From Haliotis cracherodii (taxonomy: Eukaryota): a stretch of DNA of 64,000 nucleotides. A program made the translations under genes and the position numbers. The stretch's first letter is position 1; the number at the start of each line of letters is the position of its first letter. Below the pieces are notes generated by a model. It saw only the letters and a list, made by a program, of their open reading frames with translations, was not told the origin of the DNA and made no database searches. The stretch lies in NCBI RefSeq assembly GCF_022045235.1, contig NW_027266300.1, forward strand, positions 1,364,001 through 1,428,000. The letters run 5' to 3'. This document shows, piece after piece, positions 11,101 through 51,306 of this stretch.

Positions 11101-12278
11101 TGTAATGGAGGTTCACCCGGGACTTTGTAGCTCATGTTAAAATGGATGGATTCCCAGAGTGGATCAAGACTGCCTTCGTGGTCTAATGGTAGAGCGTCCA
11201 CCTGGAGAGCGGAAGGTCCGGGGTTCGATCCCCGACCGCATCATACCAAAAGACGTTAAAAGATGGTACTTGTTAGTACCCTGTCTGGCGCTCGGCATTA
11301 AGGGGCTAAAACAAGGACTGGTAGGCTCGGAGTCAGTATACTGTGTCTGAATGGGGTATTCATGTTAAACTGCGGCATGGTATCTCAGTGAGCTAGCACT
11401 ATAAATCGGCATCAGTCCGGACTAGTACAAGCAGACACACACATACACGTGCATGCACATCGCTATATAAGTGCACGTTAAACCATATTTCACCTCACCT
11501 CACCCAGTGTGGACCAGTGGGGGACTTTGGAGCGACCACGTGATCAGTCATAAACGTCGTCTCAGCGGTAACGGGTCTATTTTAAGTCCGCTTCAATAAA
11601 TCTTGTTGAAATTGGGCTAATGTTGAAGTTTATGTCTGGTGAAGATATCGACGGAATCAGAACGAATTCCAGTTGGAATTCAGGGGGCGTTATTTGTATG
11701 TAAATATATACACAATATATAGATGTCTACTGAGAGTGAGTGATCTCCTGCTGTAACATATGTCTACTGAGAGTGCGTGATCTCCTGCTGTAACCTATGT
11801 CTACTGAGAGTGGGTGATCTCCTGCTGTAAAATATGTCTACTGAGAGTGGGTGATCTCCTGCTGTAACATATGTCTACTGAGAGTGAGTGATCTCCTGCT
11901 GTAACCTATGTCTACTGAGAGTGGGTGATCTCCTGCTGTAACCTATGTCTACTGAGAGTGGGTGATCTCCTGCTGTAACCTATGTCTACTGAGAGTGAGT
12001 GATCTCCTGCTGTAACCTATGTCTACTGAGAGTGAGTGATCTCCTGCTGTAACCTATGTCTACTTAGAGTGGGTGATCTCCTGCTGTAACCTATGTCTAC
12101 TGAGAGTGGGTGATCTCCTGCTGTAACATATGTCTACTGAGAGTGGGTGATCTCCTGCTGTAACATATGTCTACTGAGAGTGGGTGATCTCCTGCTGTAA
12201 TAGTTGTCTACTGAGAGTGAGTGATCTCCTGCTGTATCATATGTCTACTGAGAGTGGATGATCTCCTGCTGTAATAGA
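8172..12278. repeat. 37-bp satellite array (GAGAGTGGGTGATCTCCTGCTGTAATAGATGTCTACT), interrupted at ~11110-11720
   Basis: Period 37 nt; the distal block 11720-12278 is a homogeneous TAAC(C/A)TAT variant; degenerate units already appear at ~7665-7715. Confidence 0.97.
11168..11503 (+). mobile_element. Full-length tRNA-derived SINE, family B (V-domain-like core)
   Basis: A box GTGGTCTAATGG, B box GGTTCGATCCC, core CATACCAAAAGACGTTAAAAGATGGTAC...GCATTAAGGG, (CACCT)n tail, imperfect TSD CCCAGAGTGGATCA/CCCAGTGTGGACCA; second copy at 36196-36512 (-). Confidence 0.85.
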
Positions 12279-14419: not shown

Positions 14420-15140
14420 CATATGGATTTCATAATAAAAACAACTTCCAAGATGAATTACTCAATGAGAAAACTCAAACATCTACTCAGAGCATGCTTT
14501 GAATACATATATGAGGTATGGGGTGGTTGCCAACGGACAACGTGGAATATTAGAAAATTACAATTAGAAGCTGCACACATTGTAACTAGCCTACCTCAAT
14601 ATGCTCCAGGCAGCAGTTTTATTGAGAAACCGGGTGAGAACCCTTAGTTGAGCTTAGAAAGAAACATTAACTTTGTCTTTTCTTCAAAACAAATTCCTAT
14701 CTGTCAGATATTCTACTAAACACTGATGCTACTAAAACTCTTTAGAAACTCTGAAAACACCAGTGCTGTTCTTATTTTCCGTTATCAGACCAAAATTCTA
14801 CGATTTTCTGTTCTTTACAAAAGTACCCCCTACGTCACCCACGTACTTGATAAACTACACTATAATATCTTACAGACAAAACTGCGGATACATGTGCAGT
14901 CAATCAAATTATGATTTATATGGAATTAGTATAAAAGAACACCCTACCTGTACGTGTTTATCTCATTAAATGAATATTGTTTAGTCACCAGTGTGTATTT
15001 ATGATTAACAGCCTTTAAAATATTGTTCATAACATACATGGTGGTGTGAATCTTTTGTTACACGGCATAACATGTCACGTTTTTACAGATAATGATAATG
15101 AGATAATATATGTAAGACAGCCTAACATTATAAATGACAG
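14420..15140 (+). mobile_element. Decayed CR1-like LINE 3' portion
   Basis: FEYIYEVWGGC...KLQLEAAHIVTSLP resembles the post-RT EY..VW..C...LEKIQLEAARIVTG region. Confidence 0.55.
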
Positions 15141-15348
15141 ACTATAACATATGTGTAAAGAACTGTTCTCTGAACAATGCATCTTTCTCTCCTCTCTCTA
15201 TCTCACAGACACACTCAGTATTGCATGTATACAGACTGAATTAAATACCAGGGAGATGCAATCTAAAGTAACATGTCCTCCAGTACCTTTCGCTTCTTGT
15301 AAATCAATATATTCAAATCAGCGAGTGGAAAGCGTACGTATGACAAAT

Positions 15349-16686
15349 CTAGCATTTCCTCACTGGCTCCATGATAGCCGCAAAATAATGCTCAGAAGGG
15401 CACTTGATGAGCACACCTGAAATACTCCTCCTTTTCTTGAATACACTTCCTATATGTATCAGATGAGACAAGGTGTACGTTCTCCTTGGTATGCTTAGTC
15501 GGATAAAGTGCTGTTGCTTGGGATTCTCCCGTTCGTTGGTATCATCGACTTTCAAGACATCATGGAGATGTTTACATCGTATGCCACCTTCTACATACAG
15601 GGCACAGTGCAGGGCCCAAGCTGGATACTGTTCTGTGGGAATGTGGGGTAAACATTTGGCAGCGTTAATGTAGATGGCACTTCCTACTGGCTCTACTAAT
15701 GGGACGCCGGCCTTCTTCAAGATGTCTCCAAATGTGGTCAAGCTTTCAACTCTGTACTTCAGATACCTGTCATCCGTTCCTTCCCAGAGACCTCTAGCTA
15801 CAGCTTCCATATCCCGGCTAGATATCCCACCATGGTTGGAATTGCCTTCAATGTAGATCATTCGTCGTTTGAATTTTCCGTATATATCAGAGAGTCGAGT
15901 GGCGAAAAAGCCACCAATGTTACACAATCCATCCTTTTTAGCAGACATGTACATTCCATCAAAGTAGGAGAACATTTCCAGAGCTATATCTCTTGCGGGT
16001 ACATCTTGATACATCTTGTTTCGTGTTTTGATGAAATATGCATTTTCTGCAAAACGACATCCATCCATAAACAGAGGGGTATCATGCATCTTGCAGATTT
16101 CAGAAACATGTTTGATGTTTGCCATGGATACTGGCTGTCCTGCTTGATTGTTGCTGGTCAGGGTCAAGATGACAATAGCCTTGCCTGCATCCACCTCCCT
16201 GAGCTCTTCCTGCAACCGTGCACAGTCAAGATCTCCATTGAAGTATCCACCAGCAACTTGTTTGCAAGGAACATCTACCACTATCGCTCCACTGAGTTCA
16301 GCATTTTTACGCCCTGTGATATACATTGTGTTACTGAATACAGTGAGACCTGGCCTAGCTAGAACTGAGAAGAGAATATGTTCTGCTGCTCTGCCTTGGT
16401 GAACGGGAAGAATGTATGGAAATCCAGTTAAACGTTTGATGCTATCAACAAAAGCGTCAAAGCTCTCGGGATTGATGCAACCTTCGCTTGTATCCACCAT
16501 GGCAGCCCACTGGTGTTGGCTCATTGAAGCCATGCCGGAATCACTCCAAAGGTCAAAAGTTACATACTTGTCTTTGATCTGGAACGGATTGTAGCCGCTT
16601 TCATGTAGAATTTTCAATCGTTCTTCTCTGGTTGGATTCGGCAATGGTTCCACCATCTTAATGCGGAAGGGCTCAATGAATGACAT
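15349..16686 (-). CDS. tnaA: Tryptophanase/tyrosine phenol-lyase family PLP-dependent beta-eliminating lyase (TnaA-like), single coding exon, 445 aa
   Basis: Motifs EPFRIK, GYNPF, DLxxDSG, HQGRAAE, GQPVSMAN, DxxRFAENAYFIK, MSAKKDG (PLP Lys251), GG..RDMEA, PHIP..QYPA, RLSIPRRTYT; uninterrupted ORF; the symbol denotes family resemblance, not proven activity. Confidence 0.93.
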   Translation of the reverse strand: MSFIEPFRIKMVEPLPNPTREERLKILHESGYNPFQIKDKYVTFDLWSDSGMASMSQHQWAAMVDTSEGCINPESFDAFVDSIKRLTGFPYILPVHQGRAAEHILFSVLARPGLTVFSNTMYITGRKNAELSGAIVVDVPCKQVAGGYFNGDLDCARLQEELREVDAGKAIVILTLTSNNQAGQPVSMANIKHVSEICKMHDTPLFMDGCRFAENAYFIKTRNKMYQDVPARDIALEMFSYFDGMYMSAKKDGLCNIGGFFATRLSDIYGKFKRRMIYIEGNSNHGGISSRDMEAVARGLWEGTDDRYLKYRVESLTTFGDILKKAGVPLVEPVGSAIYINAAKCLPHIPTEQYPAWALHCALYVEGGIRCKHLHDVLKVDDTNERENPKQQHFIRLSIPRRTYTLSHLIHIGSVFKKRRSISGVLIKCPSEHYFAAIMEPVRKC

Positions 16687-16710
16687 TCTCTAAAATGAAA
16701 AGGTATTTGA
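16687..16710 (-). promoter_or_regulatory. Spliceosomal 3' acceptor directly upstream of the lyase ATG
   Basis: Minus strand reads tcaaataccttttcattttag|AGA ATG: polypyrimidine tract, TAG, and A at -3. Confidence 0.75.
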
Positions 16711-16738
16711 ATTTGAATTGAATTACATTAAAAACAAT

Positions 16739-19150
16739 TGAGTGAGTGAGTTAAAATTAAAGTCTCATCGGCAATATTTCAGCCATATCGTGACTATCAA
16801 GGGCTAAACATAATAAATTCATTTACACTATATAAACACCTGCGGACATAGGACAGTAAAATAACTAAACGTATCACAGAAAAAATAGGGTAGGCCTAAA
16901 TGTACTTTGAATGATGTGGAACTTCCTTAAACCCCCTTCAACAGTACAGACACTGAAATCTCATATTCTACTAATATTAAAACGACATTAAGATCTTTTA
17001 GAAAATCAAGTTCTTTCCAACAATTCAATTTCCTGTTAAAATCCAGTAATCAAGCGAGAAATATAACCATTAAAAAGATCCTTGGGAGATGATGATTTGA
17101 AATATTTATCCCTCGTCATGGCAAAATCAATAGTCAATCGCAACATGCTTGAGTGTGATTCTCTCATCAAAATGGAGGATCCCAACCTTTCAATAAGTAT
17201 TCATGTGTATATTTGCTATGGCCAATTCTACATGGTCATATTATGACCTCTTCAAATCTGGACAGACAACCTAAGCAAGTGTAACAGAAAGTTGGTTTTA
17301 TTTCATGTGATATCTTTATACATACTTGCGTGTCCCATTTCTTTTGCTTAGGAATTTTGATGTAACATCTAATTCTAATTCCAAAATTTCAAGTAAAAGT
17401 GGATGTTTTCATAGGAAATGTTCTTAATGGCCTGAAGACAGGGAATCGGGAAAAAGTATGAACTGTTTATGTTTAGATTGAGCATATATACATTTAAGAG
17501 CTGTAAACATTGCGTTTGATTCTTCTGTTAAAATTAAACTATATTTGGTAATCTTGATGACATAGTTGTCAGTCGCAAGTACATCACCATCTTTGTATTC
17601 ATCTAGAAATATAGATTTGTAAGTGCTATATGTGTTACGCAACTGATTATATTGTCGTAGGTAGATGAGTTACTTGTAGTTTCTTTCTGATTTCTTGACT
17701 TTAGTTAATGACAGGTCAACCAACTGTACCAACTGCAATGGTGAAGAAGACATGGTGGAGAGTTCTATTTTGAAGATTGATATTGGCAGCAGGAATGGAT
17801 GTTCTGATGGCTCCAAGGCAAAGATAGACACTGGATGTTGGTTATCAAAAACTTCATGTTGAACAAAATACTCTAACTAAATGGTCAACAATACTTCGAT
17901 TTTTCAGAAATCTGCACTGAATATTTGTAAATAAATTATTACATCTAAAGTTCCATATCAATCTATTGTTGACCATGCGTTCCGTGGTTTTGCAAACGAA
18001 TCTGGTCAAGGAAATAGATCTATAATTGGAAGGATCAGTGTGATCCCGTCAAGGTTTAGGTATGGGAACAACTATGGCATCACGTCATGAAGACAGAAAT
18101 TTTCCTGACGCCCAAATTTTATGAAATATTAATAGGTCTTCAAAAAAAATCAGGCTTTCTGTATAATGATTTCACTGGCCAATAAATATCCTTTATATTA
18201 CTACCAAACTGACATTATTTATATTATGAATATGGCTGTAGATAAACAGATCCCTTAGTTAAGTTAAGATATTAACCAGATCCTCAAAATCTGCATCAAA
18301 AGGCTCTGTCCGGTACACAACCCAGAACACCCAACTGATCCGTCATGGGGAAAAGGAATATCAACAAATCCGTATTGAATTAGGAAATTTGCACCTGTTG
18401 CACACGTGCGTATCATTGGAAATATGCCAGTCAAAATGACAACAAATCAAAAACCTTTTGTCTGAAAAAACATGAAAGCGAACGCTGTATTTTAGGGCAC
18501 ACAATTCCATGCCTCGGCGTTTTCAGGCATGTGTCAGAGCCCAAGGTGAACATAACCTCGGTGCTCCCAGCTTCGTTCTGAGCCTCTGTGACGTCATCCA
18601 CCGGCGTGTTCCTTACGGATTTTATTGTCAACATTTAATGTGATGGTTATGTTTGGTTCAGTTGGTTTTCTATCAATGAATTAGAATACACACCATCTGA
18701 ACATTGAATTGTTTTTTCAATGTCTTTTTTAATATATGTCATTTATTCAAGATTGTTTTTCAGATCTGTGCTGTTAGGAAGGTGAAGATTGAGACAATCT
18801 GTAGCTTGATTTGGTCAAGATGGAGGCGTACAGACGGTTTGTTTTTGTTGCCTTCGAAAATTGTTAATGTCCCCGTAAATTCTACAGTTAGGAGGTGTTC
18901 TACTTAGCAATGAAAACTCATAAGATGCAGAATAAGAATGTCCGATCAACAAGTGCCCACACCCGTGTAAATCAAGAGAAAGAAGAGGCCAACAATTGTA
19001 AACTATACCTCTTGACTCGAGTTTATTTGGAGATTCTAATCTTGATGTTATCTTGACTATCAAAATCAACCAATTCCGTTAAATTGGCTTGGTAGAAATA
19101 GCTTTGATATATCCTAAAGCCCAAACCCCTGCTCCTACTTCCTTAATATT
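16739..19150 (-). mobile_element. Decayed I/Nimb-like LINE remnants, including a 3' end with (ACTC)n tail
   Basis: Minus strand ~17235-17110 reads CRIGHSKYTHEYLLKG..PP...TLKH; 3' tail GCTGAAATATTGCCGATGAGACTTTAA..(ACTC)n at 16739-16795; weak RT-like remnants near 18.9-19.15 kb. Confidence 0.55.
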
Positions 19151-19317
19151 AAGATTTGAGAGGTGAAAGAAGAATATCCCATTCAATTCAACTGTGTCGT
19201 GTTGACCAGATATAAACGTCTGTACCCTTGACCATTATTCATTTCTTTTTGCGGTACTTAGTATTGTATTACTGACCAGAGATTGGGAATAGTCAGTATG
19301 GTGGAAATGTATTTCAA

Positions 19318-20597
19318 ACAAGAGACGTGCTAAACAATTTAAAAAATACTGCTGATACAAAAGTGATTAATGTAACAAAAATGTAACACATTATTGATGC
19401 TTACGTTGTGCGTCAAAATGAGATTTTAGCTTCAGAGAACTGTAAACTTGTCCACGTGGTATATTGAGGTCCTGAGATATTCTGAAACACGTTCATACAA
19501 ACAAATGAGAAGCCATTAGAGTACCACTCTAGCTGTATATATGTCCAAATACTCAAACATGCTTTTGGTCACTATTCACAACCGGTTCTTCATATCCAAT
19601 CGATTAAACATTTTGATTCAGCGCAGGAGGACAAATGCAAAATTCGTCCTCTTCAAATGATTAATCGATTAGAGTATTTCTCTGTAATCTGTCTGTCCGT
19701 ATACAAGAGTAGTTATTGTTCTATCAAAACAATACCATTGATTTGGGATTCGGAATTTTGTATTTCTGTCAAGTACACACCAATATGAACAGTCAAAATC
19801 AAATTTGTTGCCATGGAAACAGAATTTGTTTTCTATACACACCGTAGTAGCAAAAGGCAAACTGGTGTGTGCAAAGTGTCATGAAAGAATACCTATCAGT
19901 TTTAGAGATATAGTCTGGACAAACACACCACTATGAACAGAGTCCAAGTCAAACTTGTTGCCATGGAAAATAATTCCTAAATAACAAAAAAACACCACTT
20001 CAGTACTTGGTTAATACATGTACCAGGTTAGGATGAAAAGTCTTTCACAGTTTTCAAGTTGTGCACCTACCCCTACATTCTTAGACTAAGTCCAAATTGT
20101 TTCCATGGAAATCAAGAAAAAATAAAAATGCCAATAATCCGCAAATAACAAAAGCTACCACAACAGGATCTGTGTGATATATCTGCCAAGTTTTGTAGAA
20201 AAATACAGAACGGTTTTCGAGTTACGCTCAAGAAACCAAAAACAAGTCGCGCAAAATTATCCGTGAAACCAGCAATCGTGTCCGTGTCCAACTTCTTTCC
20301 ATAAAGATTTTTAAAAGATTTGTTTTTTGAAATTTCAAAATAGCAAAAGGTACCACTTCAGCGTGGAATGATTCGATCAAATATACTGAATGGTTTTTGA
20401 ATTCTGCCCTGGAAACGAACCCCATCTCCAATGGAGTCTATGTCCAACTTCTTTCCATAACAATTTAAAAAAAAATATCAAAAAATCCCAAAATATCAAA
20501 AGGCACCACTTCACTATGTGACTGATAGATTTGACAAGTTTCGATCAAATACACTGAATGGTTTTCGAGTTCTGCCTCGGAAAAGGAAATGATTGCG

Positions 20598-20629
<32 letters not shown>

Positions 20630-20675
20630 GACTGGCTGATCACTTTATCCCCCTGCATTATATGCCGGGGGATAA
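19318..20675 (+). mobile_element. pearl/HINE-like non-autonomous element with internal tandem core repeats
   Basis: Starts ACAAGAG after an A-run; repeated ~150-170 bp core (AAAAGGCACCACTTC...TTGCCATGGAAAC); (GACG/GACA)n microsatellite; terminal hairpin TATCCCCC...GGGGGATA; related element at 37457-37942. Confidence 0.65.
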
Positions 20676-20949
20676 TAAAAAAGTTGTTCATCCATATATC
20701 TTATCCTTACTAAAAATCATTTCACATAACATCAGTTTCAAAATCGGTGACTTTCATGTGGATCAAATGTGGTGATATTGTTAGAAAACTGTCAACTGCA
20801 ATAAAGCGGCGCATTACCAACCAAAGATTGCCCCAAATGAACTTGCGTTACCGGCTTGTCCTGGTCTTTGCATCAGAAAGTCTGTTACACCATGTGCAAC
20901 ATGTGGGTGGGCGGGCATTATCCTGCTTCAACGTGACATTACGTTTTTG

Positions 20950-41340: not shown

Positions 41341-43040
41341 AGTTATTTTCCCTTTAGTTATAGTTTTTTGGGTATGGTGATTTATGTATATTTCTTATTA
41401 TATTCTTATTCATAATTCCCAACCTACATCCCATCTCCGAAATACATTAACTGTGAAGAAGACTCCCAAAACTCCGCTCATTAAGTAAGAGAAAGCAGAG
41501 AAGTATGGCGGGGGGGGGGGGGGGGGGGAGAGGGAAACCTTAAAATCACAAATGCCAATGTTGAGTTCATCTGCTCTCCGATTGTTGTTACACAAGTGGT
41601 AAAATGGTATCCTCCCATCAATCATACAGGCCATTTGTCATACAGCTTAAAACAACATAGGTTATGCATGACTGGACCACTAACCCCCTGCCTTCTACCT
41701 ATCAATATGGACTGTTCCACACAGATCATTAACTTTGTTTATGTTTAAGTTTGTATTATAGGGAACACCAGGATTATAAATATGAATGATCTTGTGCTAA
41801 TTCATTTGCAGATTGTAAGAAAACAAATTGTAAAGAAGAAAAGTAATAAATAAATTAGTATGGTTTATTCAACATAATATTATAAATATGAACCATGTTT
41901 AACAAGAATTAATTACATAATTCAACATTCAAAGCATCATAATGGAGGATAATGGCTATCCAAGCTTCAATAGGTGACCTGCAGCATCAAGGAACTGGAT
42001 CAGACTTTTCCTTCCTTGGGTCAGCTGATCTTTCAGTCTCTGGAGTCTATTGTCAACCTCACGGTAGACCCGCTTTCTACTTGGTTCAGGTGCACGGAGG
42101 TTGATCTGCATCAACTGGATGGCACAGATTGCTGCTTGTTCAAAATCTGTCTGAAGGGGAGTGGTGGCAAGTTCTCTGTTCAGGGTGTCTGCAAACATTG
42201 GTCTTCAAAAGGCTGAACAGTCTTCTGTACGTTGGCATCTGGTGGTCGGGTAGCAAAGCATAAACTACAGGATAGCTAGCAGATCCACTTCTGATGTGAA
42301 GTATGTACACTTGATCCCAAAGGGCAGGGCAGGTGGTAAAGGTACAATCCATGTATGTCGTCTCAGCACCTTGTAGGATCTGTAGCTGCTCATCTGTGGC
42401 AAAGGCAAGGACCTTATTTTCTTCTCCATCGCTATATAGGAGGAAGCGGCCCCCATCTGATGTATGGCTCCAGGCATCATCTAGGTCCACGTGGGCTCTG
42501 GTTTAGGGCAGGACGGGTATGGTCTTCCTTCTGTGGTGGTAAAGGGCACTGCTAATGCTGGGGAAGGCAGGGAGGGCTTGGGCCTGGTCATCATCTTCAT
42601 CAGCGATCTGTTGGTTGTAGAGCAGCTGTATCGGGGTTGTTTCCTCTTTTGCTCTTCCTCAAGTTGCTGACAAAATGAACTAGGTTTGAATTCTCTGGGG
42701 TGGTTGTGCTCTGACACATTCCTCACAAAATACCAACAGTAGTGCACTTGCTGGAGCAGGATTTAATTACACGACGCCAGTGTTGTGCTGTCTGTCTTGT
42801 TGCATTCTTGTTAAACAAGTATCCTTCAAAGAGAACCTGCTGGGTACCGCGGGCTGACGTAACATATTCTACAAGTCGCAGAGCCATGATTGTGAATGAT
42901 GACTGACTGATTTATAGATTTTTACGTCCGCTTCGCATTTATTGCATTTCGAGGATGGGGTAGGTGGGGAAATAAAGATGAATAGATTAAATATGAAAAT
43001 CACCATGCCCAAAAAACTGTAACTAGCCGGGGGATGATCT
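41341..43040 (-). mobile_element. Mutator-like (MULE) transposon with FLYWCH-MULE transposase pseudogene (~41956-42887)
   Basis: ~120-bp imperfect TIRs (TAGTTATAGTTTTTTGGGTATGGTGAT / ATCACCATGCCCAAAAAACTGTAACTA); motifs FEGYLF..W, HNHP, YMDCTFTTCP..QVYILH, PVVYALLP, TDFEQAAI. Confidence 0.85.
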
Positions 43041-43179
43041 AGATTGTACTAGTGATGATACTTCGAGAGTATTATTATGGGTGTTGTTATTAGGAGGGAG
43101 CGTTAAGGGCCTTTACTATATATTACAGGGGAACACTGAGGTAGGGGTATAGCATATTGGGTGATTGAAGATATGTAGT

Positions 43180-46100
43180 TAGGCCACATTATTTAAGTAA
43201 GGGGAATAGATAAATAAAGAAAAAAGGGTTAAATTTTAGAGCCGTATAAGCCGGTTGTCCCCTGGGGTGGGTGGTGGGTGGTGGTGTTGTGACGTGGGTT
43301 GGTGGCGAGCGGTGTGGGCTTGTTATTGGTTGGTGCCGGCTGGCTTAACGACTGTATTAAGTTAGTGTATGGATAACCAGGGTTATAGGCACGGACGTCG
43401 GAGAGGACGACTCGTGTTGGAAATTTTGATCCCGATCCGAAAGTTGTTTTTTTTGGTTTACTAGGGCATAGTTATGTTGTATAGATTTGTTTGGGAGGTT
43501 CTAAAATCAGTCTGTAAGGTCGGCTTTGATGATGAATTGGGTTATTGCGTTGAAGATGGGGATAGGGTTGGAAGGGTTGAAAAGTTGTGTGAGGTTTTGT
43601 TTATAGTTAGGAGGGATAGCGTGATAAAGTTCGGAGTGAAGGGCGCAATATAAAGGACAGCTGTTAAAAATATGATACAAGTCTTCTGGTTGATTACAAT
43701 ATGTACATTTCCCGTCCGGGTGCTGCCTTGTTTGTGTAAATTGTGGTTGAGGTTGGTATTTCCGCTAATGATTCTTGATATAATATTGTCCAAGTGGTTA
43801 GAGCTGTTAAAGTTGCGGCATTTGAGATTGTATTGCGTAAAAAGTGTTTTGAGCCATTGCGAGTTGGTGTTTTGGATTATATTGTTGTAGTTTTGGAGTT
43901 TTATAGACTTTTTAAATTTGTTTTTTAACTCTGCTTTGGAGGTGTGGAAATATATTTCTAATGAGGGCTGTTGGGTGGCTATTTTGGCTGCTATATGTGC
44001 TTTGTTATTGCCTGGTATATTGGTGTGTCCCGAGGCCCAGAGTAGACTGATTTGTTTGTTGTTATTGTTGAGTTGGGTGATGAGAGTAATAATGTTGTTG
44101 ATGAGGTCTGGGCGTGTTCTGGAGTATTTGTTTTGAATTTGTTTCTGTGCGGTTAGTGAGTCTGATATTATTAGAAATTTTTGTTGGTTAATTGTTTTGA
44201 TGGCATGAATTGATGTAAGGATGGCTAATAGTTCCCCTGTGTAATTGTTAGTGAAGTTTTTATAGTGAAAGTTTGTTCTGACGGGGGGTTGTTGGTCTAT
44301 GTGTATTCCTAGTCCTGTTTTCCCATTGTTTTGTGATGCGTCGGTGTAAATGTGGGTGTGTGTCGGCCAGTTGTTGTGGAGGTGTCTAAGGGTTGCTTCG
44401 GTCTTTTTTGCAGTTGGAGTACCGGGGCTTTGTATAAATAATTCGTGGAGCAGTGTGTCTACTGGGGGGGGGGGATGGGAGGTCGGCTATGTATTGGAGG
44501 GAGGGGTGTGTGTGTGTTATATTGCTTAGATTGTGGGTGTGTATTAGCTTGAGTAGGTGGGTCATGTATGGGGCTTGGTCAGGGGATTTATTGAATTTGA
44601 TTGCCGTTTGTTTGTTAATGTTGTTATATTTTTGTTTGAGTGTTTTAAAGATTGGATTGTGTTGTGCCCCAGCCCCAGTAGTTGAGGATTTTCTGTTGTA
44701 ATCTGTGTGTAATGGAGAGAGAGTTGGTCATGAGTAGTAAGGCATGGTGTGAGGTACCAGTCCTGGTGCCGGTGGCTATTTTGAGGGCCTTATATTGGAT
44801 TGATTTAATTTTGTTGTAGTTAGTAGTTGAAATGCCACTTGAGGCTGGAGCGGTGTAGTCGATTTTGGATTGAATAAGTGTTTTGTAGATGTTGAGGTGG
44901 GTTTGTTTGTCAGACCCCCAATCGTTCCCTTTCATAGCTCTCATTAGGTTTAAATCTTTTTCACAAGAGTTGACCAATTTTGATATATGGGGGCCCCATG
45001 TAAGATGTTGATCAAATGTAACTCCTAGGAACTTAGCTTCTTTTTGGTATGTAATTTCTTTGTCATTAAGGTGAAGTTTGGGTGTGTAATTTTGCATATA
45101 TTGTTTTTTGAAGAGGGCCAATGGTCTTTTTGGTGTTTGATTTGGAATCCCCAGTTGGAAGCCCAATTTTGGATATTGTTTAAAGCAGATTGCATTCTAG
45201 TTTTTAGTAAATAGATGGAGGCCGAGGAGGTCCAGAGGGAAACGTCATCTGCGAATTTTGCTGTGGTAATTTTTTCTTTATTTTTTAATCTGAGAAGATG
45301 TCATTTATCATAAAATTGCATAGAGTTGGCGATAAGATGCTTCCTTGTGGGGTGCCGTTTTCAATGGGGTGAGTGTCGGACAGGGTTTGATGGGATTTAA
45401 CAGTGATGTGTCTGTCGGTTAGGAAAGAGTGAATGAAGTTTAGTATTCTCCCATTGATATGATTGTTTTCAAGTTTTTTAAGAAGGCCGTTATGCCAAAC
45501 CATGTGGAAAGCTTTGCTGACATCTATAAAGATGTCCAGGGTGTATTGTTTCATTGATTGTCTGTCCTTAGGTCTTGTTCTAGGTGTAGGATGTGGTCTA
45601 ATGTTTGTCTGTTATTTGTGAAGCCCCTCTGGTCTGGGCTGATTAGTCTGTTTATGGAGATGTGATGCTTAAGTCTATTATTGATAATTGATTCAAGGAT
45701 TTTGCATGTGTGGGAGGTTAGGGATATGGGACGGAAGGAGTCGGGATCATTGGGGGGTTTGCCTGGCTTCAGGACTGGAATGATTTTTGCGTGTTTCCAT
45801 GTTTGTGGTGTTGTGCCTGTTGACCATATTTGGTTGTAGAGTTGTAGTAATAATTGTTGTATTTGAGGTGTGATTTTATTTAGTATCATGTAGCTTATGT
45901 TATCTAGTCCCGTGGCTGAGGCTGTGTTTTTGTTATGGAGTGCATGTAGAAGTTCATGTATATTGATGGTTTTATTGATGGAGAGATGGGCTAAGTCGTA
46001 GGTTCGTAGGGGTGGTGGTTTTTGATTTTGTCTTGGAAGGGGGGGGGGGGATAGTTGGCGGTGCTGCTGGTCTTGGCAAAGTGAATAGCTATATGATTGT

Positions 46101-49100
46101 TTTATATATGATTTAAGTTTGTTCCTTATTTTTCTTGAATTATTTTCGCCAAATTTGAGGGTATTGCAGAAAAGCTGCTAGTTTTTTTTTCTGGCCGTTT
46201 TAATGAGCTGTTTGGTATGGTTTCTGAGATGAATGAAATCAGGAATTTTTGTTTTTATCTCGTTTGCTTCTACTTAGGGCTCTTTTCCTTAATTTCCTAG
46301 AGTTTTGGGTGTCCGCCGCTCCACCAGGGGACTGGGTTGTGGGAGGGGGTGGGTTGTGGGAGGGGGGTGGGTAGTGGGAGGGGGTGGGTTTGTGGGAAGG
46401 GGTGGGTTGTGGGAGGGGGACTGGGTTGTGGGAGGGGACTGGGTTGTGGGAGGGGGTGGGTTTGGTTGTGGGTATGCATTGGCTTGCGATTTGGAATAAC
46501 GTTAGGTTGGTATTGAATGTGTCTATGTTGCTGTTTTGTATATTTTTGGGGTCTGTTTGGTTGCATAGTTTGGTAAAGAGTTGCCAATTGGCTTTTTGGA
46601 AGTTGAATTTTATTTGCTGGGTGGTTTCTAAAGGAGGTTCGTTAGTGGATAAAGGGGGATTTGAAGAGCATTTAGTTTCGATGTTAATGGGGAAGTGGTC
46701 ACTTCCCCAGGTGTCGTTATGAACATCCCAGCTAATTAGATTGGACAGTCTGTTTGTTATTAGTGAAAGGTCTACTGTGGTAGGTTTTGTAGTCTGGATG
46801 TTGGGTATCTTGTGGGTTGGTTATCGTTGAGTGAGATGAGGTTTGCCTTGTCTATCCATTCTACCAGAAGTCTCCCGAATTTATCAGTATAGTTTTTAGT
46901 TCCTCAGAGCGGGTGGTGTGCATTAAGGTCTCCGAGTAGGATGGTGTTATGGGTGATATGCTTGGACAGAATATCAAGGTCCTGGGAGGTAAAAGGTTTG
47001 GTTTTAGTATGATAGATATTTATTATTCTTACATTAGTTTTGTGGAAGGTTGTATCTATTGCCAGGGTTTCTAGATTGGGGGTGGGGATGGGGACGGTAC
47101 TGTAGTTAAGTGAATTATGGATAAAAAGAGCAAGTCCTCCGTGACGGGGGCCGGGAGTGTTTGGTTGTCGGGGTCGGTCTTTACGTAGAAATTGGAATTC
47201 GGGGATTTGGAAGTCTTTTTTGGATGGAAGTAGGGTTTCCTGGAGTGCAATAATGAGGGGTAGTATTTCTTTAAGAGAGAAGAGGGCCTTTAGTTCGTGT
47301 CCGTTGGCCCGAAGGCCATTACAATTCCATTGTATGATGGACATGCTTGGAAGGGGGGTTGTGCTGGGGGCTAGGGATTGGACTGGGGGGGTAGGGTAGG
47401 TTGGAATGTTAGTATTTTAGTTTGAGGGTAGCTGTTTGGAGAGATGCAAAAGACTTCTGGTAGATTTTGGACATGGTAGCTAATGTGTGGAGTTTTTTGG
47501 CAGTAGGGTGTTTAAGAAGAATGGCTGCGATTATAAATTCGACTAGTTTGTTTGTGTTATTGTACAGTTTTTGTGGAGTGATGTTTGCGGAGGGTGTGGA
47601 CTTAAGTTGATGTATTTTGTTTGTTAGGAATTCTCTTCTGTGTTTGGAGATATGGAGTGGATTGGAAGTGGGGTGGGGGAGGGATTGGTAGGGGGTGGGG
47701 AGGTGGGGAGGTGGGGAGGGGGGTATGTGGGGGAGTATGGGGGTAGGGGTTTGGAATGCTAGCGGTTGTTTGGGTATGGTGGATGAGGGTTGGGGGGGTG
47801 GTGGAAGAGCTGTGGTCTGAGTGTTGTTTGGGAGTGTAGAGGTTTGTGGGGGGGGAGGGTTTGTGGGGGGGGGAGGGTATGTAGGGGAGAGTAGCGGGGC
47901 TGTAGTTGTGGATGGCAAGGGATGGATGTAGACTGTGGTTGTGGTGGTAGGGGGTGGTGTGGGTTTGGTTGGTTTTTGGTTGGTGGCCCGTGGGTGAGTT
48001 GAAGTTGATGGTGGCATGGGCTGGGGGTTGGGGGTAGGAGGGGTGGTTGTGTGTAGGAGCTGAATGAGGAATCAAGGTCATGGTCGGAGAGGGGATAGGG
48101 GTCTTCAGGGTTGTCTTCTGAGTAATACTGGAGGAGGGGGATTTGGGCTGGTTTGGGGAGGTCAGTTTGTTTGAGGTTTTTGTTTAGATTGAGTATGTAT
48201 TTTTGTTTTGTTGGGCATGTATTCCGGTTTGAGGTGTGGCCCTCTGATTTGCAGTTAACACAGTATGGGGCCCAGGAGCATTCCTGGATGGCATGGTTTT
48301 CAGAGCCACATTTAGGGCACAGGGGCGTTTTTTTGCAGTCGGAGGCCTTATGTTCGAAAGAATGGTAGTAGATACATTGGGGTGGTTTTTTTCTGATTGG
48401 GTGAACTTTGTAGTTTAGTGCTCCGAAGGTAATGTAGTTTGGTAATGAGGTTGCTTTGAATGTAAGAAAGATGGTTTGTTTGGTGAGTCTACCCTGGGTG
48501 AGTTGGCGTTTGTTTATTGCTCTGAAGTTGGTGATTTGGGGTTGTGTGGGGAATTGGTTGGACCATGTTGATGTAATCTTGAATGTCGTCTGAGGTGCCA
48601 CTTGTGTCGAGGTAAATCACTTCTTGCATTTCTGTTTGCCATCGGGGAATTTGCCAATTGATATTTAGACCATCAATGATGGGGGTTCTGATAGCCAAGT
48701 TGAGGGGGAGGATTGGTCGTAAAAGGTAATTTTTAAACCTCTCCCGCAGGAGTTAATGAATTTGAAGTTTAGATTTGATTTTTTGAGGCAGACTGCGAAT
48801 TTGTTGGCTGAGAAGGTTTCATTTAGTGGTGTAGTGGAGTTTGCATGGAAGGCTGTGAGAATTTGTTTTGTGGGTGGGTTTTGGGTAGTGTTCTGGGGGG
48901 GTGTTTGTTTGTCACAGGTTTTTTTGGTGTTTTGTTGGATTTCTGTTGGGGAGTCAATGGACCTTTTGTTATTTTTGTTGATGTTGGTTTGGGGGGGGGA
49001 TAGATGTTTAAGTGATGGGTCGGGAGGGGGTGATGATTTCCAGGTCTAGTCCAAAATTTGGGGGTATTTTATTTATGTTTTGTGTAGTGGGAAGGCCTGG

Positions 49101-49675
49101 AAATTCTTTGGGATCGGGTGTGGAGAAGATGGAAGTGGATAGGAGTGGGGAGGGGAGGTCCATGGGGGGCGAGTATGTAGTGTCCATGATTTGGGAGAGG
49201 GGGTTGGGAACGGTGGTGGGGGTAGGTGGATATATACAAGATAATGGGTGATATACAAACAATCAATCAATGAAATAATTTACAGTTGGATGAGAATTGA
49301 TGAGTATTTACAGTCTATTTACATGGTTTATGCATTGAAGTACAAACATTGCATTGGGGAACATAAAAGTGGGAGGATAAATATAAGTTTTGATGAAGTA
49401 GGGGAGATAAGGTAGCAACTTATCTATGCTTTGGTTCTTTGTATCGAGAGTCCGTGGGGTGGGCTTGGGGGTGAGGCATTCGGTTGCAGTGGCGGCCGGC
49501 CGGCTTACAATGAATGTCCGAATCCCAGTATTTGGGCTTGTGTGTTATGGTGACGTTCGAAATCCCAGTTGGCGATGGTGAGTGCTGTGATCTTGGATGT
49601 AACGATGTTTGAGGTGAGTTAATGACTGGAGATGGCCTAGGAGGGCTGTTTGGGTTCCCATGCCGGGGACATGAC
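43180..49675 (-). mobile_element. Near full-length decayed I/Nimb-clade LINE (ORF1 with CCHC knuckles; ORF2 APE-RT-RNase H)
   Basis: ORF1 QC...H...C, CPKCGSENH..EC, CVNCKSEGH...CP; ORF2 MSIIQWNCNGL, LQET, LLGDLNAHH, FRPISLTS, DVSKAF, GTPQGSILSP, FADD, IYTDAS, SDSL; many frameshifts; 5' boundary approximate. Confidence 0.92.
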
Positions 49676-51306
49676 TTTCTTCTCAAACATGAAAAATATA
49701 TGACGACGCTGTGAATGATGCAATTGATACAGTATTTATACATATGTGTGTGATCACAAAATACATCTCATCAGTTAAACAGTTTCTCAGCTCAAACATC
49801 TCTAGTCTCCTTTCATAGGATTACATAAATTACATTTATTAACCTCAAAGGGCAAAGTATTCATTAAAACATATTAATTATTTGTTAGTAAAAGAACTTA
49901 CAGTGACTTTGATCATTTTATTACCCTCTTCTCACAAGATAACCAGCTCACAACAACTCACCCTTGATGACTTTAACATTGTTGTTGTAACAAAGACCTT
50001 AACTCAGAGTGTGGGCCATACCATTACAGCTGAAGGTGAGTGCTCTAATTACCCCTCTACTCAACTGTATGACGATTGGCAATAACAAGGTGTATGACAA
50101 ATGGCCTGTCTGATTGATGGGATTAGTCCCGATCCTACCCTGTTTGTTAAAAACCTCAAACACCCGATGAGGATATACTGAAAAGGCTTTGTTTTTCATT
50201 GGCTTTAATAGCCAATTCAATAAGGTGTAATGTATCACTACATCAAGGTACTTCATTTCGCACTTTGGAACCATTACCAGTAATAATATTTTCTGTACAT
50301 GTCTTAAAGACACATCTTTAATTGGGTCATTCTACAGGAAAAAAACAACACATTTTGTTATTTATTTTATAAAAACAAAACACTTAAGAAATATGTTCAT
50401 AATCCAATGTGTGACGTATTCACCATGGGCCGCCTCTTTATATTGAGTATATTATCAACTATATTTTCAAACTTCAAATACTGTAAATCTTGAAATTAAT
50501 GTGAGCTTAATTCAAATGCAAACTATGCAAGCTAGTGGTCTTTGCTCGCCTTGAATAAACATTACAGTTATATCTCAAAATGACAATCAATAAAAAGGCC
50601 CCTCACTTCACATTTTGGATGGCAGAAATACGAACTTGGACATAAAAACAAACAACTATGTATATTCCACATCATTGTATATTGAGCAGCAGTTGTAACA
50701 AGTATTTAACAATGTCATTCAAACACTAGAAATTACATATAAACATTCAGTGAATTGTCACTGCTGGGGTCAAGAGATCTACTCACTCATGTCGAACATT
50801 GGAGATGAAAATTTAACTTGAGTTGGTTCAATTATCTTATTTCCTTTGAACTTCCATAATACCAGTCAACAGAATAAACACATACTTTATCTACTGTTTT
50901 TAGGAAAGCACTACGTATTGATTTTGCCGTAAGTACACAACTAATAATATTTACTGGTTGATTGGATTAAGGTTGGATTAAGGTAAGGAGTCACATTCAT
51001 ACTGAGTAACGTTTTTGGCTAGGGGCCAGCAGTATCATTCCATTGGATCGAGGTGCTTTCATTTCAAGATTTACAGTAGTCAGACTACAATGTACAGCAG
51101 AGGTAATTCTGAGATTAATTGTAATATTATGGTAATGACATTCGGTGTCGATTGTAACATGTAAATAAAGAAAGTTCAGTATTCTCATGAATACTGAGAT
51201 GAGAACTTATAAATTTCAGTTGTTTTCATGATCAAATAGTTCATTAACTTAGTTAAATCCAATACAGGTTTAAGATAAAACAATATATAATCATATATCT
51301 GAGTAG

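What the first reader, a model, noticed from the sequence alone, without database searches (positions are those of the whole stretch)
15349..16710. Bacterial-type tryptophanase/TPL-family gene embedded in an animal genome and wired for splicing
Seen: an intact intronless 445-aa ORF with TnaA/Tpl motifs from end to end. It is flanked by host LINE/SINE relics (a LINE tail ~50 bp upstream). There are no bacterial neighbours (no tnaC leader, no tnaB permease), and a canonical acceptor (ccttttcattttag|AGA ATG) lies 3 nt before the start codon. Established: this family is predominantly prokaryotic and not part of the standard metazoan gene set; acquiring a 5'-UTR intron is a typical step in domesticating transferred genes. 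Inference: a horizontally acquired gene expressed from a host promoter. It is the only long ORF that stays intact while every TE ORF around it has decayed, which suggests purifying selection.
Basis: partly seen in the sequence, partly recalled or inferred. Interest (0 to 1): 0.85.

Follow-up and report, generated by a model that had tools for sequence, protein, structure and literature searches.

The report
Re-tooled tryptophanase-like gene in abalone
This is a real, transcribed and spliced abalone gene of the bacterial-looking tryptophanase family, but it comes from an old animal branch of that family that multiplied in abalone and lost the residues needed to split tryptophan, so it is neither a recent gene transfer nor a working tryptophanase.

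Summary
Window 15349-16686 (-) is an intact 445-aa ORF of the beta-eliminating lyase family (PF01212; NCBIfam tryptophanase subfamily 457 bits), set in abalone (Haliotis cracherodii-like) DNA with host repeats. The predicted splice acceptor is used. Transcriptome-like contigs from two runs join 16689 to 19405/19407 across a 2.7-kb GT..AG intron, from a 5' exon that is unique in the genome.

The reading as a lineage-specific transfer is only partly supported. The genome holds at least 8 intact copies plus fragments, all with the same one-coding-exon layout. All Haliotis copies form one clade. That clade groups with chiton, freshwater mussel, Nematostella and horsehair-worm genes, apart from all sampled rows treated as bacterial (most unnamed; support 83-99). 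The nearest bacteria are only about 45% identical. Animal tryptophan indole-lyases are already in the literature (Boya 2021; Yuasa 2023).

What looks undescribed is the abalone expansion and its remodelled active site. The PLP lysine and the phosphate and carboxylate contacts are kept. The catalytic Tyr is Cys70 here, and the indole-binding Asp and His are gone in every abalone copy. dN/dS against the nearest paralog is 0.24, but this allele carries private changes and a 4-codon deletion.

Most likely it is a PLP beta-lyase with a new substrate. A partner subunit or a decaying copy are the rivals.

The parts
15349..16686 (-). Complete coding sequence (445 codons + stop) of a tryptophanase/TPL-family PLP lyase, encoded on a single exon
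16687..16689 (-). Last 3 nt of the 5' UTR on exon 2 (AGA), between the acceptor and the ATG
16690..19404 (-). 5'-UTR intron, 2715 nt, GT..AG on the minus strand (donor GTAAGC; acceptor = polypyrimidine tract + AG)
   Evidence: Joints 16689->19405 (run X1) and 16689->19407 (run X4, 166 letters on the far side). Donor read. No contig depth across 17300-17699 and 17900-19099, and at most trace depth in the rest of the intron apart from the repeat.
19405..19572 (-). 3' part of exon 1 (non-coding 5' exon). Contigs continue upstream to about 19832; the transcription start is not known. An in-frame TAA in exon 1, 8 codons upstream of the splice junction (9 codons before the ATG), means no N-terminal extension.
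   Evidence: 19300-19666 has no other copy in the genome.
19667..19900 (.). Dispersed repeat of about 240 bp (77-89% identical copies on many contigs) that overlaps the upstream part of exon 1
16739..16885 (.). Dispersed repeat of about 147 bp inside the intron, 53 bp upstream of the ATG; very high depth in transcriptome contigs
14900..15348 (-). 3' UTR (minimum extent). The X1 contig has about 136 more letters beyond 14900; the poly(A) site is not determined.
16477..16479 (-). Codon 70, TGC = Cys, at the position of the catalytic general-acid Tyr (Tyr72 in P. vulgaris, Tyr74 in E. coli)
16318..16320 (-). Codon 123, ATC = Ile, at the position of the indole-NH-binding Asp (Asp133 in P. vulgaris, Asp137 in E. 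coli)
15934..15936 (-). Codon 251, AAG = Lys, the PLP Schiff-base lysine within the S-A-K-K-D motif
15433..15434 (-). Site of a 12-nt in-frame deletion (4 codons) private to the window allele, relative to transcripts of three runs, paralog L002 and the H. asinina ortholog
15241..16832 (-). Only block homologous (92.4% nt) to the nearest paralog on contig C45; the flanks beyond it are unrelated

Best explanation
The ORF is a genuine nuclear abalone gene. It belongs to a Haliotis-specific expansion (at least 8 intact copies plus several broken ones) of the animal tryptophan indole-lyase (tryptophanase-like) lineage. That lineage is bacterial in type but entered animals long before abalone existed.

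Shown here: the whole lyase body is one exon. A non-coding 5' exon about 2.7 kb upstream is spliced to an acceptor 3 nt before the ATG. The same layout (an AG acceptor 0-10 nt from the start codon) is found in every intact copy checked. At the deep paralog on contig C5, comparing the gene model with the genomic ORF implies an intron directly before its conserved Met, so this gene structure predates the expansion.

Inferred function: the protein keeps everything needed to bind PLP and the amino-acid carboxylate (Lys251, Asp208, Arg211, Gln-Gly-Arg 97-99, Ser248, Arg402, cation ligands Glu68 and Asn256). It has lost the residues that make a tryptophanase or a tyrosine phenol-lyase: Tyr to Cys70, Asp/Thr to Ile123, His/Phe to Tyr434, with Leu374 rather than Arg. 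It is therefore most likely a cytosolic, oligomeric PLP enzyme that still does alpha,beta-elimination or beta-replacement, but on a substrate other than tryptophan. The likeliest substrates have a better (S- or O-linked) leaving group and do not need the tyrosine general acid. The remodelled pocket is conserved between the cracherodii and asinina orthologs, which argues for a retained, changed function rather than decay.
For: Family and integrity.

Animal context: paralog L002 is amino-acid-identical to the H. cracherodii protein P0002, and L006 to P0006. The flanks are host repeats. GH18 exons lie on the same scaffold.

Family size: 20 matches in the genome, 8 of them intact, mostly in the first 0.9 Mb of contig C45.

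Not a haplotig: homology to L002 is limited to 15241-16832.

Splicing and transcription: contigs of four runs cover 14900-16689 and 19405-19832 but almost none of the intron apart from its repeat. GT..AG joints at 16689|19405 appear in two runs. Exon 1 is unique in the genome.

Conserved acceptor in all paralogs. In the C5 copy, the gene models start with 8 residues that are not collinear with the genomic ORF, directly before an AG|ATG.

Phylogeny: the Haliotis clade has support 99-100. The clade of animals plus unnamed large-contig rows, against 51 rows treated as bacterial (most unnamed), gets SH-like 99 (FastTree, 146 rows), SH-aLRT 97 (LG+C20 PMSF) and 60.5/83 (LG+F+G4). Phe242 is shared by 9/12 Haliotis rows and 9/13 other animal rows but by 0/51 bacterial rows.

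Active site: mapped to P. vulgaris numbering through. Roles of Tyr74 and Asp137, and the alternative substrates (S-alkyl-cysteines, serine, beta-chloroalanine), come from PMC6826157 and PMC2770544.

Selection: dN/dS is 0.24 against L002 and 0.11-0.14 against older paralogs.
Against: No enzyme assay exists, so the substrate is a guess. The clade of animal sequences is only moderately supported under LG+F+G4 (UFBoot 83). Long branches of the animal sequences could attract each other, and I could not name most cluster representatives. Cephalopod, coral and hemichordate sequences were therefore not knowingly included.

The window allele has private replacements (A78, K127, A145, V313, S414; T203 is less sure, since two of the four runs show no change there) against one synonymous change, plus a 4-codon deletion. 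That pattern fits relaxed constraint on this copy.

The runs are only guessed to be RNA, their organisms are coded, and none is shown to be the window's own species. Contigs cannot give expression level, start or end.
Confidence: 0.7

Rival explanations
1. One reading: a bacterial gene transferred into the abalone lineage itself, independently of other animals, then domesticated by acquiring a 5'-UTR intron.
For: The family is overwhelmingly bacterial. The best non-Haliotis hits to the window protein are bacterial, at about 45% identity. The slow-evolving chiton protein is as similar to Chloroflexota proteins (52-55%) as to the one named animal protein listed, a mussel protein at 54%. The coding region has no introns. 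Support for the animal clade drops to UFBoot 83 under a simple model.
Against: Three tree analyses all recover Haliotis together with chiton, mussels, Nematostella and Gordionus, and never inside a bacterial group; the site-heterogeneous model gives the highest support. A residue signature is shared with the other animals. There is no close bacterial relative among 5.8 billion proteins.
Confidence: 0.12
2. A transcribed but functionally dying duplicate or pseudoenzyme: the copy on scaffold C37 is a young duplicate of the C45 gene drifting towards loss, and its open frame reflects youth, not selection.
For: On the window lineage there are about 5 non-synonymous changes to 1 synonymous, including Ser at an otherwise invariant Asp/Glu (position 414). 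A private 12-nt deletion falls in the C-terminal domain. The family shows birth and death: L003, L009, L011, L012 and the C23 fragments carry stops, and L008 has lost the PLP lysine. The catalytic Tyr is absent.
Against: The frame is intact over 445 codons. dN/dS against L002 is 0.24 at dS 0.11. The Cys70/Ile123/Leu374/Tyr434 pocket is identical in the H. asinina ortholog P0003, so the remodelling is old and maintained. The locus is transcribed and correctly spliced in at least two other samples.
Confidence: 0.2
3. An obligate subunit of a mixed tetramer. As reported for the two cephalopod indole-lyases, Tyr-less subunits (the Cys or Ser types) pair with Tyr-bearing paralogs (the L006/L007 and C5 types). 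The tyrosine acts across the dimer interface, so only hetero-oligomers would be active.
For: In this family the general-acid Tyr reaches into the neighbouring subunit's active site (PMC2770544). Hybrid dimers of Y74F and H463F mutants regain activity (Phillips 2002, by its title in the reference list of PMC12980246). Cephalopods have two such genes (Yuasa 2023 J Mol Evol; title only, details from my memory). Abalone keep both Tyr-bearing and Tyr-less paralogs, each conserved across species.
Against: No abalone paralog retains the Asp or the Arg-His-Phe motif, so no combination can rebuild a canonical tryptophan site. Co-expression was not examined, and no interaction test was run.
Confidence: 0.15
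4. Bacterial contamination or a chimeric assembly.
For: The gene sits on a 1.44-Mb unplaced scaffold.
Against: Host dispersed repeats lie on both sides and in the intron. A spliced transcript links the ORF to an exon 2.7 kb away. Paralogs sit on chromosome-scale contigs and in four other Haliotis assemblies. GC content matches the host.
Confidence: 0.01

Closest known systems
Bacterial tryptophanase / tryptophan indole-lyase (TnaA, EC 4.1.99.1; e.g. P. vulgaris 1ax4, E. coli 2oqx)
   Same: Same fold and length, and alignable from residue 3 to 442. The PLP lysine motif S-x-K-K-D, Asp and Arg at the pyridine ring, the Gln-Gly-Arg phosphate loop, the carboxylate-binding Arg and the monovalent-cation ligands are all kept.
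   Different: The catalytic Tyr is Cys, the indole-binding Asp is Ile, and the Arg-His-Phe C-terminal motif reads His-Tyr-Phe. Scores fall far below both tryptophanase equivalog cut-offs (336 against 826 bits; 374 against 750 bits). There is no tnaC/tnaB operon; the gene has a eukaryotic structure with an intron.
Tyrosine phenol-lyase (TPL, EC 4.1.99.2; Citrobacter freundii 2ez1)
   Same: Same subfamily; 1e-89 to solved TPL structures. An aromatic residue stacks on PLP (Tyr122).
   Different: The TPL specificity residues are missing: Ile in place of Thr124 and Leu in place of Arg381. The catalytic Tyr71 equivalent is Cys. TIGR02618 scores 361 bits against a cut-off of 721.
Metazoan tryptophan indole-lyases (Yuasa 2023, Comp Biochem Physiol B 263:110801; Yuasa 2023, J Mol Evol 91:912; survey in Boya et al. 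2021, PMC8537960)
   Same: An animal-encoded gene of bacterial type that groups with chiton, mussel, sea-anemone and nematomorph genes. It carries substitutions expected to disrupt tryptophanase activity, and the family has multiple paralogs.
   Different: Chiton P0324, mussel P0455 and Nematostella P0166 keep the full canonical site. Every abalone copy has lost the Asp and the Arg-His-Phe motif, and the family has grown to at least 8 intact genes. I found no paper in the searchable library that mentions the Haliotis genes. I could not read the two Yuasa papers, so they may cover abalone.

Membership tests
Beta-eliminating lyase family (Pfam PF01212) / NCBIfam NF009709 tryptophanase subfamily | Profile match above the curated cut-off over the full length | tested here: met
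   PF01212 scores 190.5 bits (cut-off 27). NF009709 scores 456.8 bits (cut-off 285) over residues 3-442 of 445.
Beta-eliminating lyase family (Pfam PF01212) / NCBIfam NF009709 tryptophanase subfamily | PLP Schiff-base lysine and PLP-anchoring residues | tested here: met
   Lys251 in S-A-K-K-D, Asp208, Arg211, Gln97-Gly98-Arg99, Ser248 and Asn179 are all conserved.
Tryptophanase proper (TnaA, EC 4.1.99.1) | Equivalog-level profile score | tested here: not met
   TIGR02617 scores 335.6 against a cut-off of 825.8; NF053783 scores 373.9 against 750.
Tryptophanase proper (TnaA, EC 4.1.99.1) | General-acid Tyr (E. coli Tyr74 / P. vulgaris Tyr72) | tested here: not met
   Cys70 is at this position. 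46 of 51 sampled rows treated as bacterial and 12 of 13 non-Haliotis animal or unnamed rows that cover the site have Tyr.
Tryptophanase proper (TnaA, EC 4.1.99.1) | Indole-binding Asp (Asp137/133) and His (His463/458) | tested here: not met
   Ile123 and Tyr434 occupy these positions. Role of Asp137: PMC6826157.
Tryptophanase proper (TnaA, EC 4.1.99.1) | Indole formation from L-tryptophan | not testable with these tools
   Needs an enzyme assay.
Tyrosine phenol-lyase (EC 4.1.99.2) | Thr124, Arg381 and Phe448 specificity residues, plus the equivalog score | tested here: not met
   Ile123, Leu374 and Tyr434 occupy these positions. TIGR02618 scores 361.5 against a cut-off of 720.7.
Metazoan tryptophan indole-lyase lineage | Groups with other animal sequences to the exclusion of bacterial ones | tested here: met
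   Recovered in three analyses with support 99, 97 and 60.5/83. Animal sampling was limited to Mollusca, Cnidaria and Nematomorpha.
Metazoan tryptophan indole-lyase lineage | Shared gene structure or synteny with other animal members | not tested
Recent lineage-specific horizontal transfer | Nested within a bacterial clade, or close identity to a living bacterium, with no relatives in other animals | tested here: not met
   The best bacterial identity is about 45%, and animal relatives exist.

The most novel reading that the evidence does not exclude
Abalone have turned an anciently acquired tryptophanase into a family of new PLP lyases. Paralog groups carry Cys, Ser or Tyr at the general-acid position and different pocket residues, and each group is conserved across species. 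They would act on substrates not yet known for this enzyme family, for example sulfur- or oxygen-substituted amino acids from the seaweed diet, possibly as mixed tetramers.
Probability: 0.3. Interest if true: 0.6.

Novelty: new variant of a known kind. Interest (0 to 1): 0.42.

Why it matters
This is a clean, checkable example of what happens to a bacterial-type enzyme after hundreds of millions of years in animal genomes. It has a host-type gene structure with a conserved intron just before the start codon. It has undergone lineage-specific tandem expansion with birth and death of copies. Its catalytic pocket has been rebuilt while the cofactor machinery is kept.

For annotation, it shows that the label 'tryptophanase-like' on abalone genes should not be read as indole production.

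For enzymology, natural Tyr-to-Cys and Tyr-to-Ser variants at the general-acid position, conserved across species, are ready-made probes of how this family chooses its leaving group.

It does not change the picture of gene transfer into animals, because the animal branch of this family was already known.

Tried and rejected
**Readings considered and rejected**
- Contamination or chimera: rejected.
- Allelic haplotig of the C45 copy: rejected, because the flanks are unrelated beyond 15241-16832.
- Processed retrocopy of L002: rejected. The shared block runs 143 bp into the intron, there is no poly(A) tract at its 3' edge, and the 3' UTR continues past it.
- Membership in TnaA proper or in TPL: rejected on residues and equivalog scores.

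**Steps that did not work or added nothing**
I could not fetch ortholog DNA from other species or the gene structures of the chiton, mussel and sea-anemone genes. Ortholog dN/dS therefore rests on the partial difference table.
- The 'careful' site-heterogeneous tree did not finish in two 288-s runs. I report the quick C20 tree and a finished LG+F+G4 tree with ultrafast bootstrap. One run was killed by the sandbox.
- No AU test was run.
- The listing of cluster members gave no names for the large-contig ENA sequences or the Logan transcripts that fall in the animal clade.
- The ESM Atlas added nothing beyond the family name.
- The two Yuasa papers are not held. The compendium's supplement is not held.

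Exons were handled by reference only.
- No structure or complex prediction was run. The outputs would not give residue distances, and a homodimer pass would not discriminate between the explanations.
Full report
**1. The observation**

Window 15349-16686 on the minus strand is an uninterrupted 445-codon frame. It is the longest ORF in the 64 kb by a wide margin; the next is 280 aa. The protein matches Pfam PF01212 (Beta_elim_lyase) at 5e-56. It matches the NCBIfam tryptophanase subfamily NF009709 at 456.8 bits against a cut-off of 285, covering residues 3-442. It stays far below the equivalog cut-offs for tryptophanase (335.6 against 825.8; 373.9 against 750) and for tyrosine phenol-lyase (361.5 against 720.7). 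The best solved relatives are Proteus vulgaris tryptophanase at 2e-93 and tyrosine phenol-lyases at about 1e-90. The polypyrimidine tract plus AG, 3 nt before the ATG, is in the sequence.

**2. Whose DNA it is**

The closest proteins are 'tryptophanase-like' proteins of Haliotis cracherodii (94%), H. asinina (83%) and further Haliotis paralogs at 57-63%. The best non-Haliotis hits are bacterial, at 42-46%.

The window is C37:1364001-1428000 of a 1.18-Gb assembly with 80 contigs. Two other copies in that assembly are amino-acid-identical to H. cracherodii proteins (L002 = P0002, L006 = P0006). The genome is therefore black abalone or something extremely close to it.

The surroundings are animal DNA:
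- A dispersed repeat of about 147 bp, with more than 1000 candidate copies, lies 53 bp upstream of the ATG.
- A second dispersed repeat lies at 19667-19900.
- A LINE endonuclease relic lies at 46904-47344.
- Exons of a GH18 chitinase-type gene lie on the same scaffold just left of the window.

**3. A gene family, not a lone gene**

The genome has 20 matches to the protein:
- the window copy on C37;
- a cluster in the first 0.9 Mb of contig C45, which includes six of the intact copies (L002, L004, L005, L006, L007, L008);
- a divergent intact copy on C5 (47% identical);
- broken copies or fragments on C45, C23 and C1.

All intact copies encode the lyase body on one exon. The nearest copy, L002, shares only the block 15241-16832 with the window, at 92.4% nucleotide identity. 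The flanks are unrelated. The two are therefore dispersed paralogs and not haplotypes. The block runs into the intron and has no poly(A) tail at its end, so the window copy is not a processed retrocopy.

**4. Transcription and splicing**

One search found 17 small assemblies the tool guesses to be RNA (the coded organisms A to E) and 6 further runs of unknown kind that hold part of the ORF. None is on record as RNA. I laid the contigs of four of them on 14900-20899.

- Coverage is continuous over 14900-16689 and present over about 19405-19832. It is zero across 17300-17699 and 17900-19099 and at most trace elsewhere in the intron, apart from the very deep signal of the repeat at 16700-16899. 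This is what transcripts look like and not what genomic DNA looks like.
- Two runs from different coded organisms contain the joint 16689 to 19405 (X1) or 19407 (X4). X4 has 166 matching letters on the far side. The skipped segment reads CT..AC on the plus strand, which is GT..AG on the gene's strand.
- The donor reads GTAAGC at 19404 downward.
- The segment 19300-19666 has no other copy in the genome. These spliced contigs therefore come from the ortholog of this locus and not from L002.
- An in-frame TAA in exon 1, eight codons upstream of the splice junction and nine before the ATG, shows that the intron is purely 5'-UTR (read).

Limits: these are contigs, so level, start, end and strand of the RNA are not shown. 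The organisms are coded, and none is shown to be the window's own species.

**5. The intron position is old**

Each of the seven intact copies on C37 and C45 has a polypyrimidine tract plus AG within 0-10 nt upstream of its start codon. For the deep C5 copy, the gene models of three species begin with eight residues that are not collinear with the genomic ORF. The genome reads ...tttttcaag|ATG at exactly that point. That implies an intron directly before the conserved Met-Glu-Pro-Phe. The layout 'small 5' exon plus one exon for the whole enzyme' thus predates the expansion.

**6. Origin**

A representative search of 1.84 billion proteins, followed by name look-ups, showed relatives in a chiton (Liolophura), two unionid mussels (Potamilus, Sinanodonta), Nematostella and the nematomorph Gordionus. 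There were also unnamed proteins on contigs of 0.36-8.6 Mb.

| Analysis | Haliotis clade | Animal and unnamed large-contig rows against rows treated as bacterial |
|---|---|---|
| FastTree, 146 rows | 99 | 99 (clade of 36 rows) |
| IQ-TREE LG+C20 PMSF, 77 rows | SH-aLRT 99 | SH-aLRT 97 (26 against 51 rows) |
| IQ-TREE LG+F+G4 with ultrafast bootstrap | 99.8/100 | 60.5/83 |

Phe242 is shared by 9/12 Haliotis rows and 9/13 other animal rows, but by 0/51 rows treated as bacterial.

The simplest reading is one old entry of the gene into animals, or an even older presence, followed by patchy loss and then expansion within abalone.

I cannot exclude long-branch attraction among the fast-evolving animal sequences. 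The slowly evolving chiton protein is as similar to Chloroflexota proteins (52-55%) as to a mussel protein. I also could not knowingly include cephalopod, coral or hemichordate sequences.

The presence of this family in octopus, sea anemones, corals and hemichordates is already published (PMC8537960). Two papers by Yuasa (2023) deal with metazoan and cephalopod tryptophan indole-lyases. I know them only by title, from the reference lists of PMC12980246 and PMC13342648. They are not held in the library.

**7. Active site**

Using the residue-by-residue alignment to P. vulgaris tryptophanase and a 77-sequence alignment:

*Kept in the window protein*
- the PLP lysine (Lys251 in S-A-K-K-D);
- Asp208 and Arg211;
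- the Gln-Gly-Arg phosphate loop (97-99), Ser248 and Asn179;
- the carboxylate-binding Arg402;
- the cation ligands Glu68 and Asn256.

*Lost in the window protein*

| Role (P. vulgaris / E. coli numbering) | Canonical residue | Window protein |
|---|---|---|
| General acid | Tyr72 / Tyr74 | Cys70 |
| Indole-NH binding | Asp133 / Asp137 | Ile123 |
| C-terminal motif | His458 / His463 | Tyr434 |
| Tyrosine phenol-lyase specificity | Arg381 | Leu374 |

In the sampled sequences, 46 of 51 rows treated as bacterial have the Tyr and 43 of 51 the Asp. Chiton P0324, mussel P0455 and Nematostella P0166 keep the full canonical set. Every Haliotis copy lacks the Asp and the Arg-His-Phe motif. The Tyr survives only in the L006/L007 group and the C5 group. 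It is Cys in the window group and Ser in the L004, L005 and L008 groups. L008 has also lost the PLP lysine.

Within each group the pocket residues are largely the same, and in the C5 group identical, between the H. cracherodii-type and H. asinina orthologs. The remodelling is therefore old and maintained.

From the literature:
- The Tyr donates the proton to the leaving group (PMC6826157) and reaches into the neighbouring subunit's site; the Y74F mutant has negligible activity (PMC2770544).
- The Asp activates the indole ring (PMC6826157).
- The enzyme also accepts S-alkyl-cysteines, serine, O-acyl-serines and beta-chloroalanine. Substrates with good leaving groups need no general acid (PMC6826157).

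**8. Selection**

By the Nei-Gojobori method, dN/dS is 0.24 between the window copy and L002 (dS 0.11, dN 0.026) and 0.11-0.14 against older paralogs.

The listed differences between the window and the transcript contigs give roughly equal synonymous and non-synonymous counts. That corresponds to about 0.3-0.55 after allowing for the number of sites. The difference table was truncated, so this is rough.

At sites where all four runs and L002 agree against the window, the window lineage has about five amino-acid replacements to one synonymous change. One replacement puts Ser at an otherwise invariant acidic position (414). The window also has a private 12-nt in-frame deletion. The X1 contig carries L002-type bases in patches. 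That may reflect gene conversion or a mixed contig.

**9. What it most likely is and does**

*Shown:* a real abalone gene, transcribed and spliced in related samples, and a member of a Haliotis-specific expansion of an animal branch of the tryptophanase family.

*Inferred:* a cytosolic PLP enzyme. There is no N-terminal extension or signal sequence, because the protein starts where bacterial ones do. It probably still forms the family's dimer-of-dimers and catalyses alpha,beta-elimination or beta-replacement on something other than tryptophan or tyrosine. The likeliest substrate is a cysteine or serine derivative with a good leaving group.

*Rivals:*
- a decaying or non-catalytic duplicate;
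- a subunit that works only in mixed tetramers with Tyr-bearing paralogs, as hybrid-dimer rescue in E. coli and the cephalopod pair suggest;
- contamination, which is effectively excluded.

**10. Novelty**

The kind (bacterial-type tryptophanase genes in marine invertebrates, some with disruptive substitutions) is known, and the abalone genes carry automatic 'tryptophanase-like' names. I found no description of the size of the abalone family, its shared intron-before-start structure, or the family-wide loss of the tryptophan-specific residues with Cys/Ser/Tyr variants at the general-acid position. I cannot rule out that the unread Yuasa papers mention it.

An earlier first-stage note of this scan on the same stretch (s1-826250) made the same active-site observation, and I confirmed it here.

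**11. Tools and limits**

- The careful tree did not finish.
- No AU test, structure prediction or complex prediction was run.

Noticed in passing
G000:C45:62834-878347 (loci L002-L009, L011, L012): Most of the family sits as a loose cluster in the first 0.9 Mb of a chromosome-scale contig: six intact copies, plus copies with 1-2 stop codons and fragments. This is a birth-and-death pattern.
   Followed up: partly
L008 (G000:C45:836988-838235): An intact 456-aa paralog in which the PLP lysine motif reads A-H-M instead of S-K-K and the Gln-Gly-Arg phosphate loop reads Q-R-S. It cannot bind PLP in the usual way, yet the frame is open: a candidate pseudoenzyme.
   Followed up: partly
window 19667-19900: The upstream part of the gene's 5' exon, as seen in transcript contigs reaching about 19832, overlaps a dispersed repeat of about 240 bp. 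The promoter or first exon may therefore be repeat-derived.
   Followed up: no
window 16700-17703: In run X8 the contig runs 11 nt past the acceptor and then skips 1002 nt to 17703, with GT..AG ends on the plus strand (the wrong strand for this gene) and only 30 letters on the far side. It may be a 1-kb insertion/deletion difference between species or an unspliced variant. Unexplained.
   Followed up: no
window 15733-16079 compared with L002: The X1 transcript contig matches the window at most paralog-distinguishing sites but carries L002-type bases in two contiguous patches. This suggests gene conversion between the two paralogs, or a contig that mixes them.
   Followed up: partly
proteins P0121-P0130: Deltaproteobacterial MAG proteins of about 900 aa consist of two tandem tryptophanase/TPL-like domains. 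They were the top-scoring non-abalone representatives, named by their sources as tryptophanase or tyrosine phenol-lyase.
   Followed up: no
protein P0156: A 3002-aa metagenomic protein labelled 'tryptophanase/guanylate kinase' carries a full lyase domain at residues 85-507.
   Followed up: no
window 12000-12274: A tandem array of a 37-bp unit, 7.4 copies, 93% matches.
   Followed up: no
window 42000-50000: Strong positive GC skew (up to 0.62) and negative AT skew across about 8 kb. The region includes a LINE endonuclease-like ORF at 46904-47344.
   Followed up: no
G000:C37:1356819-1363299 (just left of the window): Three exon-sized matches to GH18 (chitinase family) on the plus strand.
   Followed up: partly
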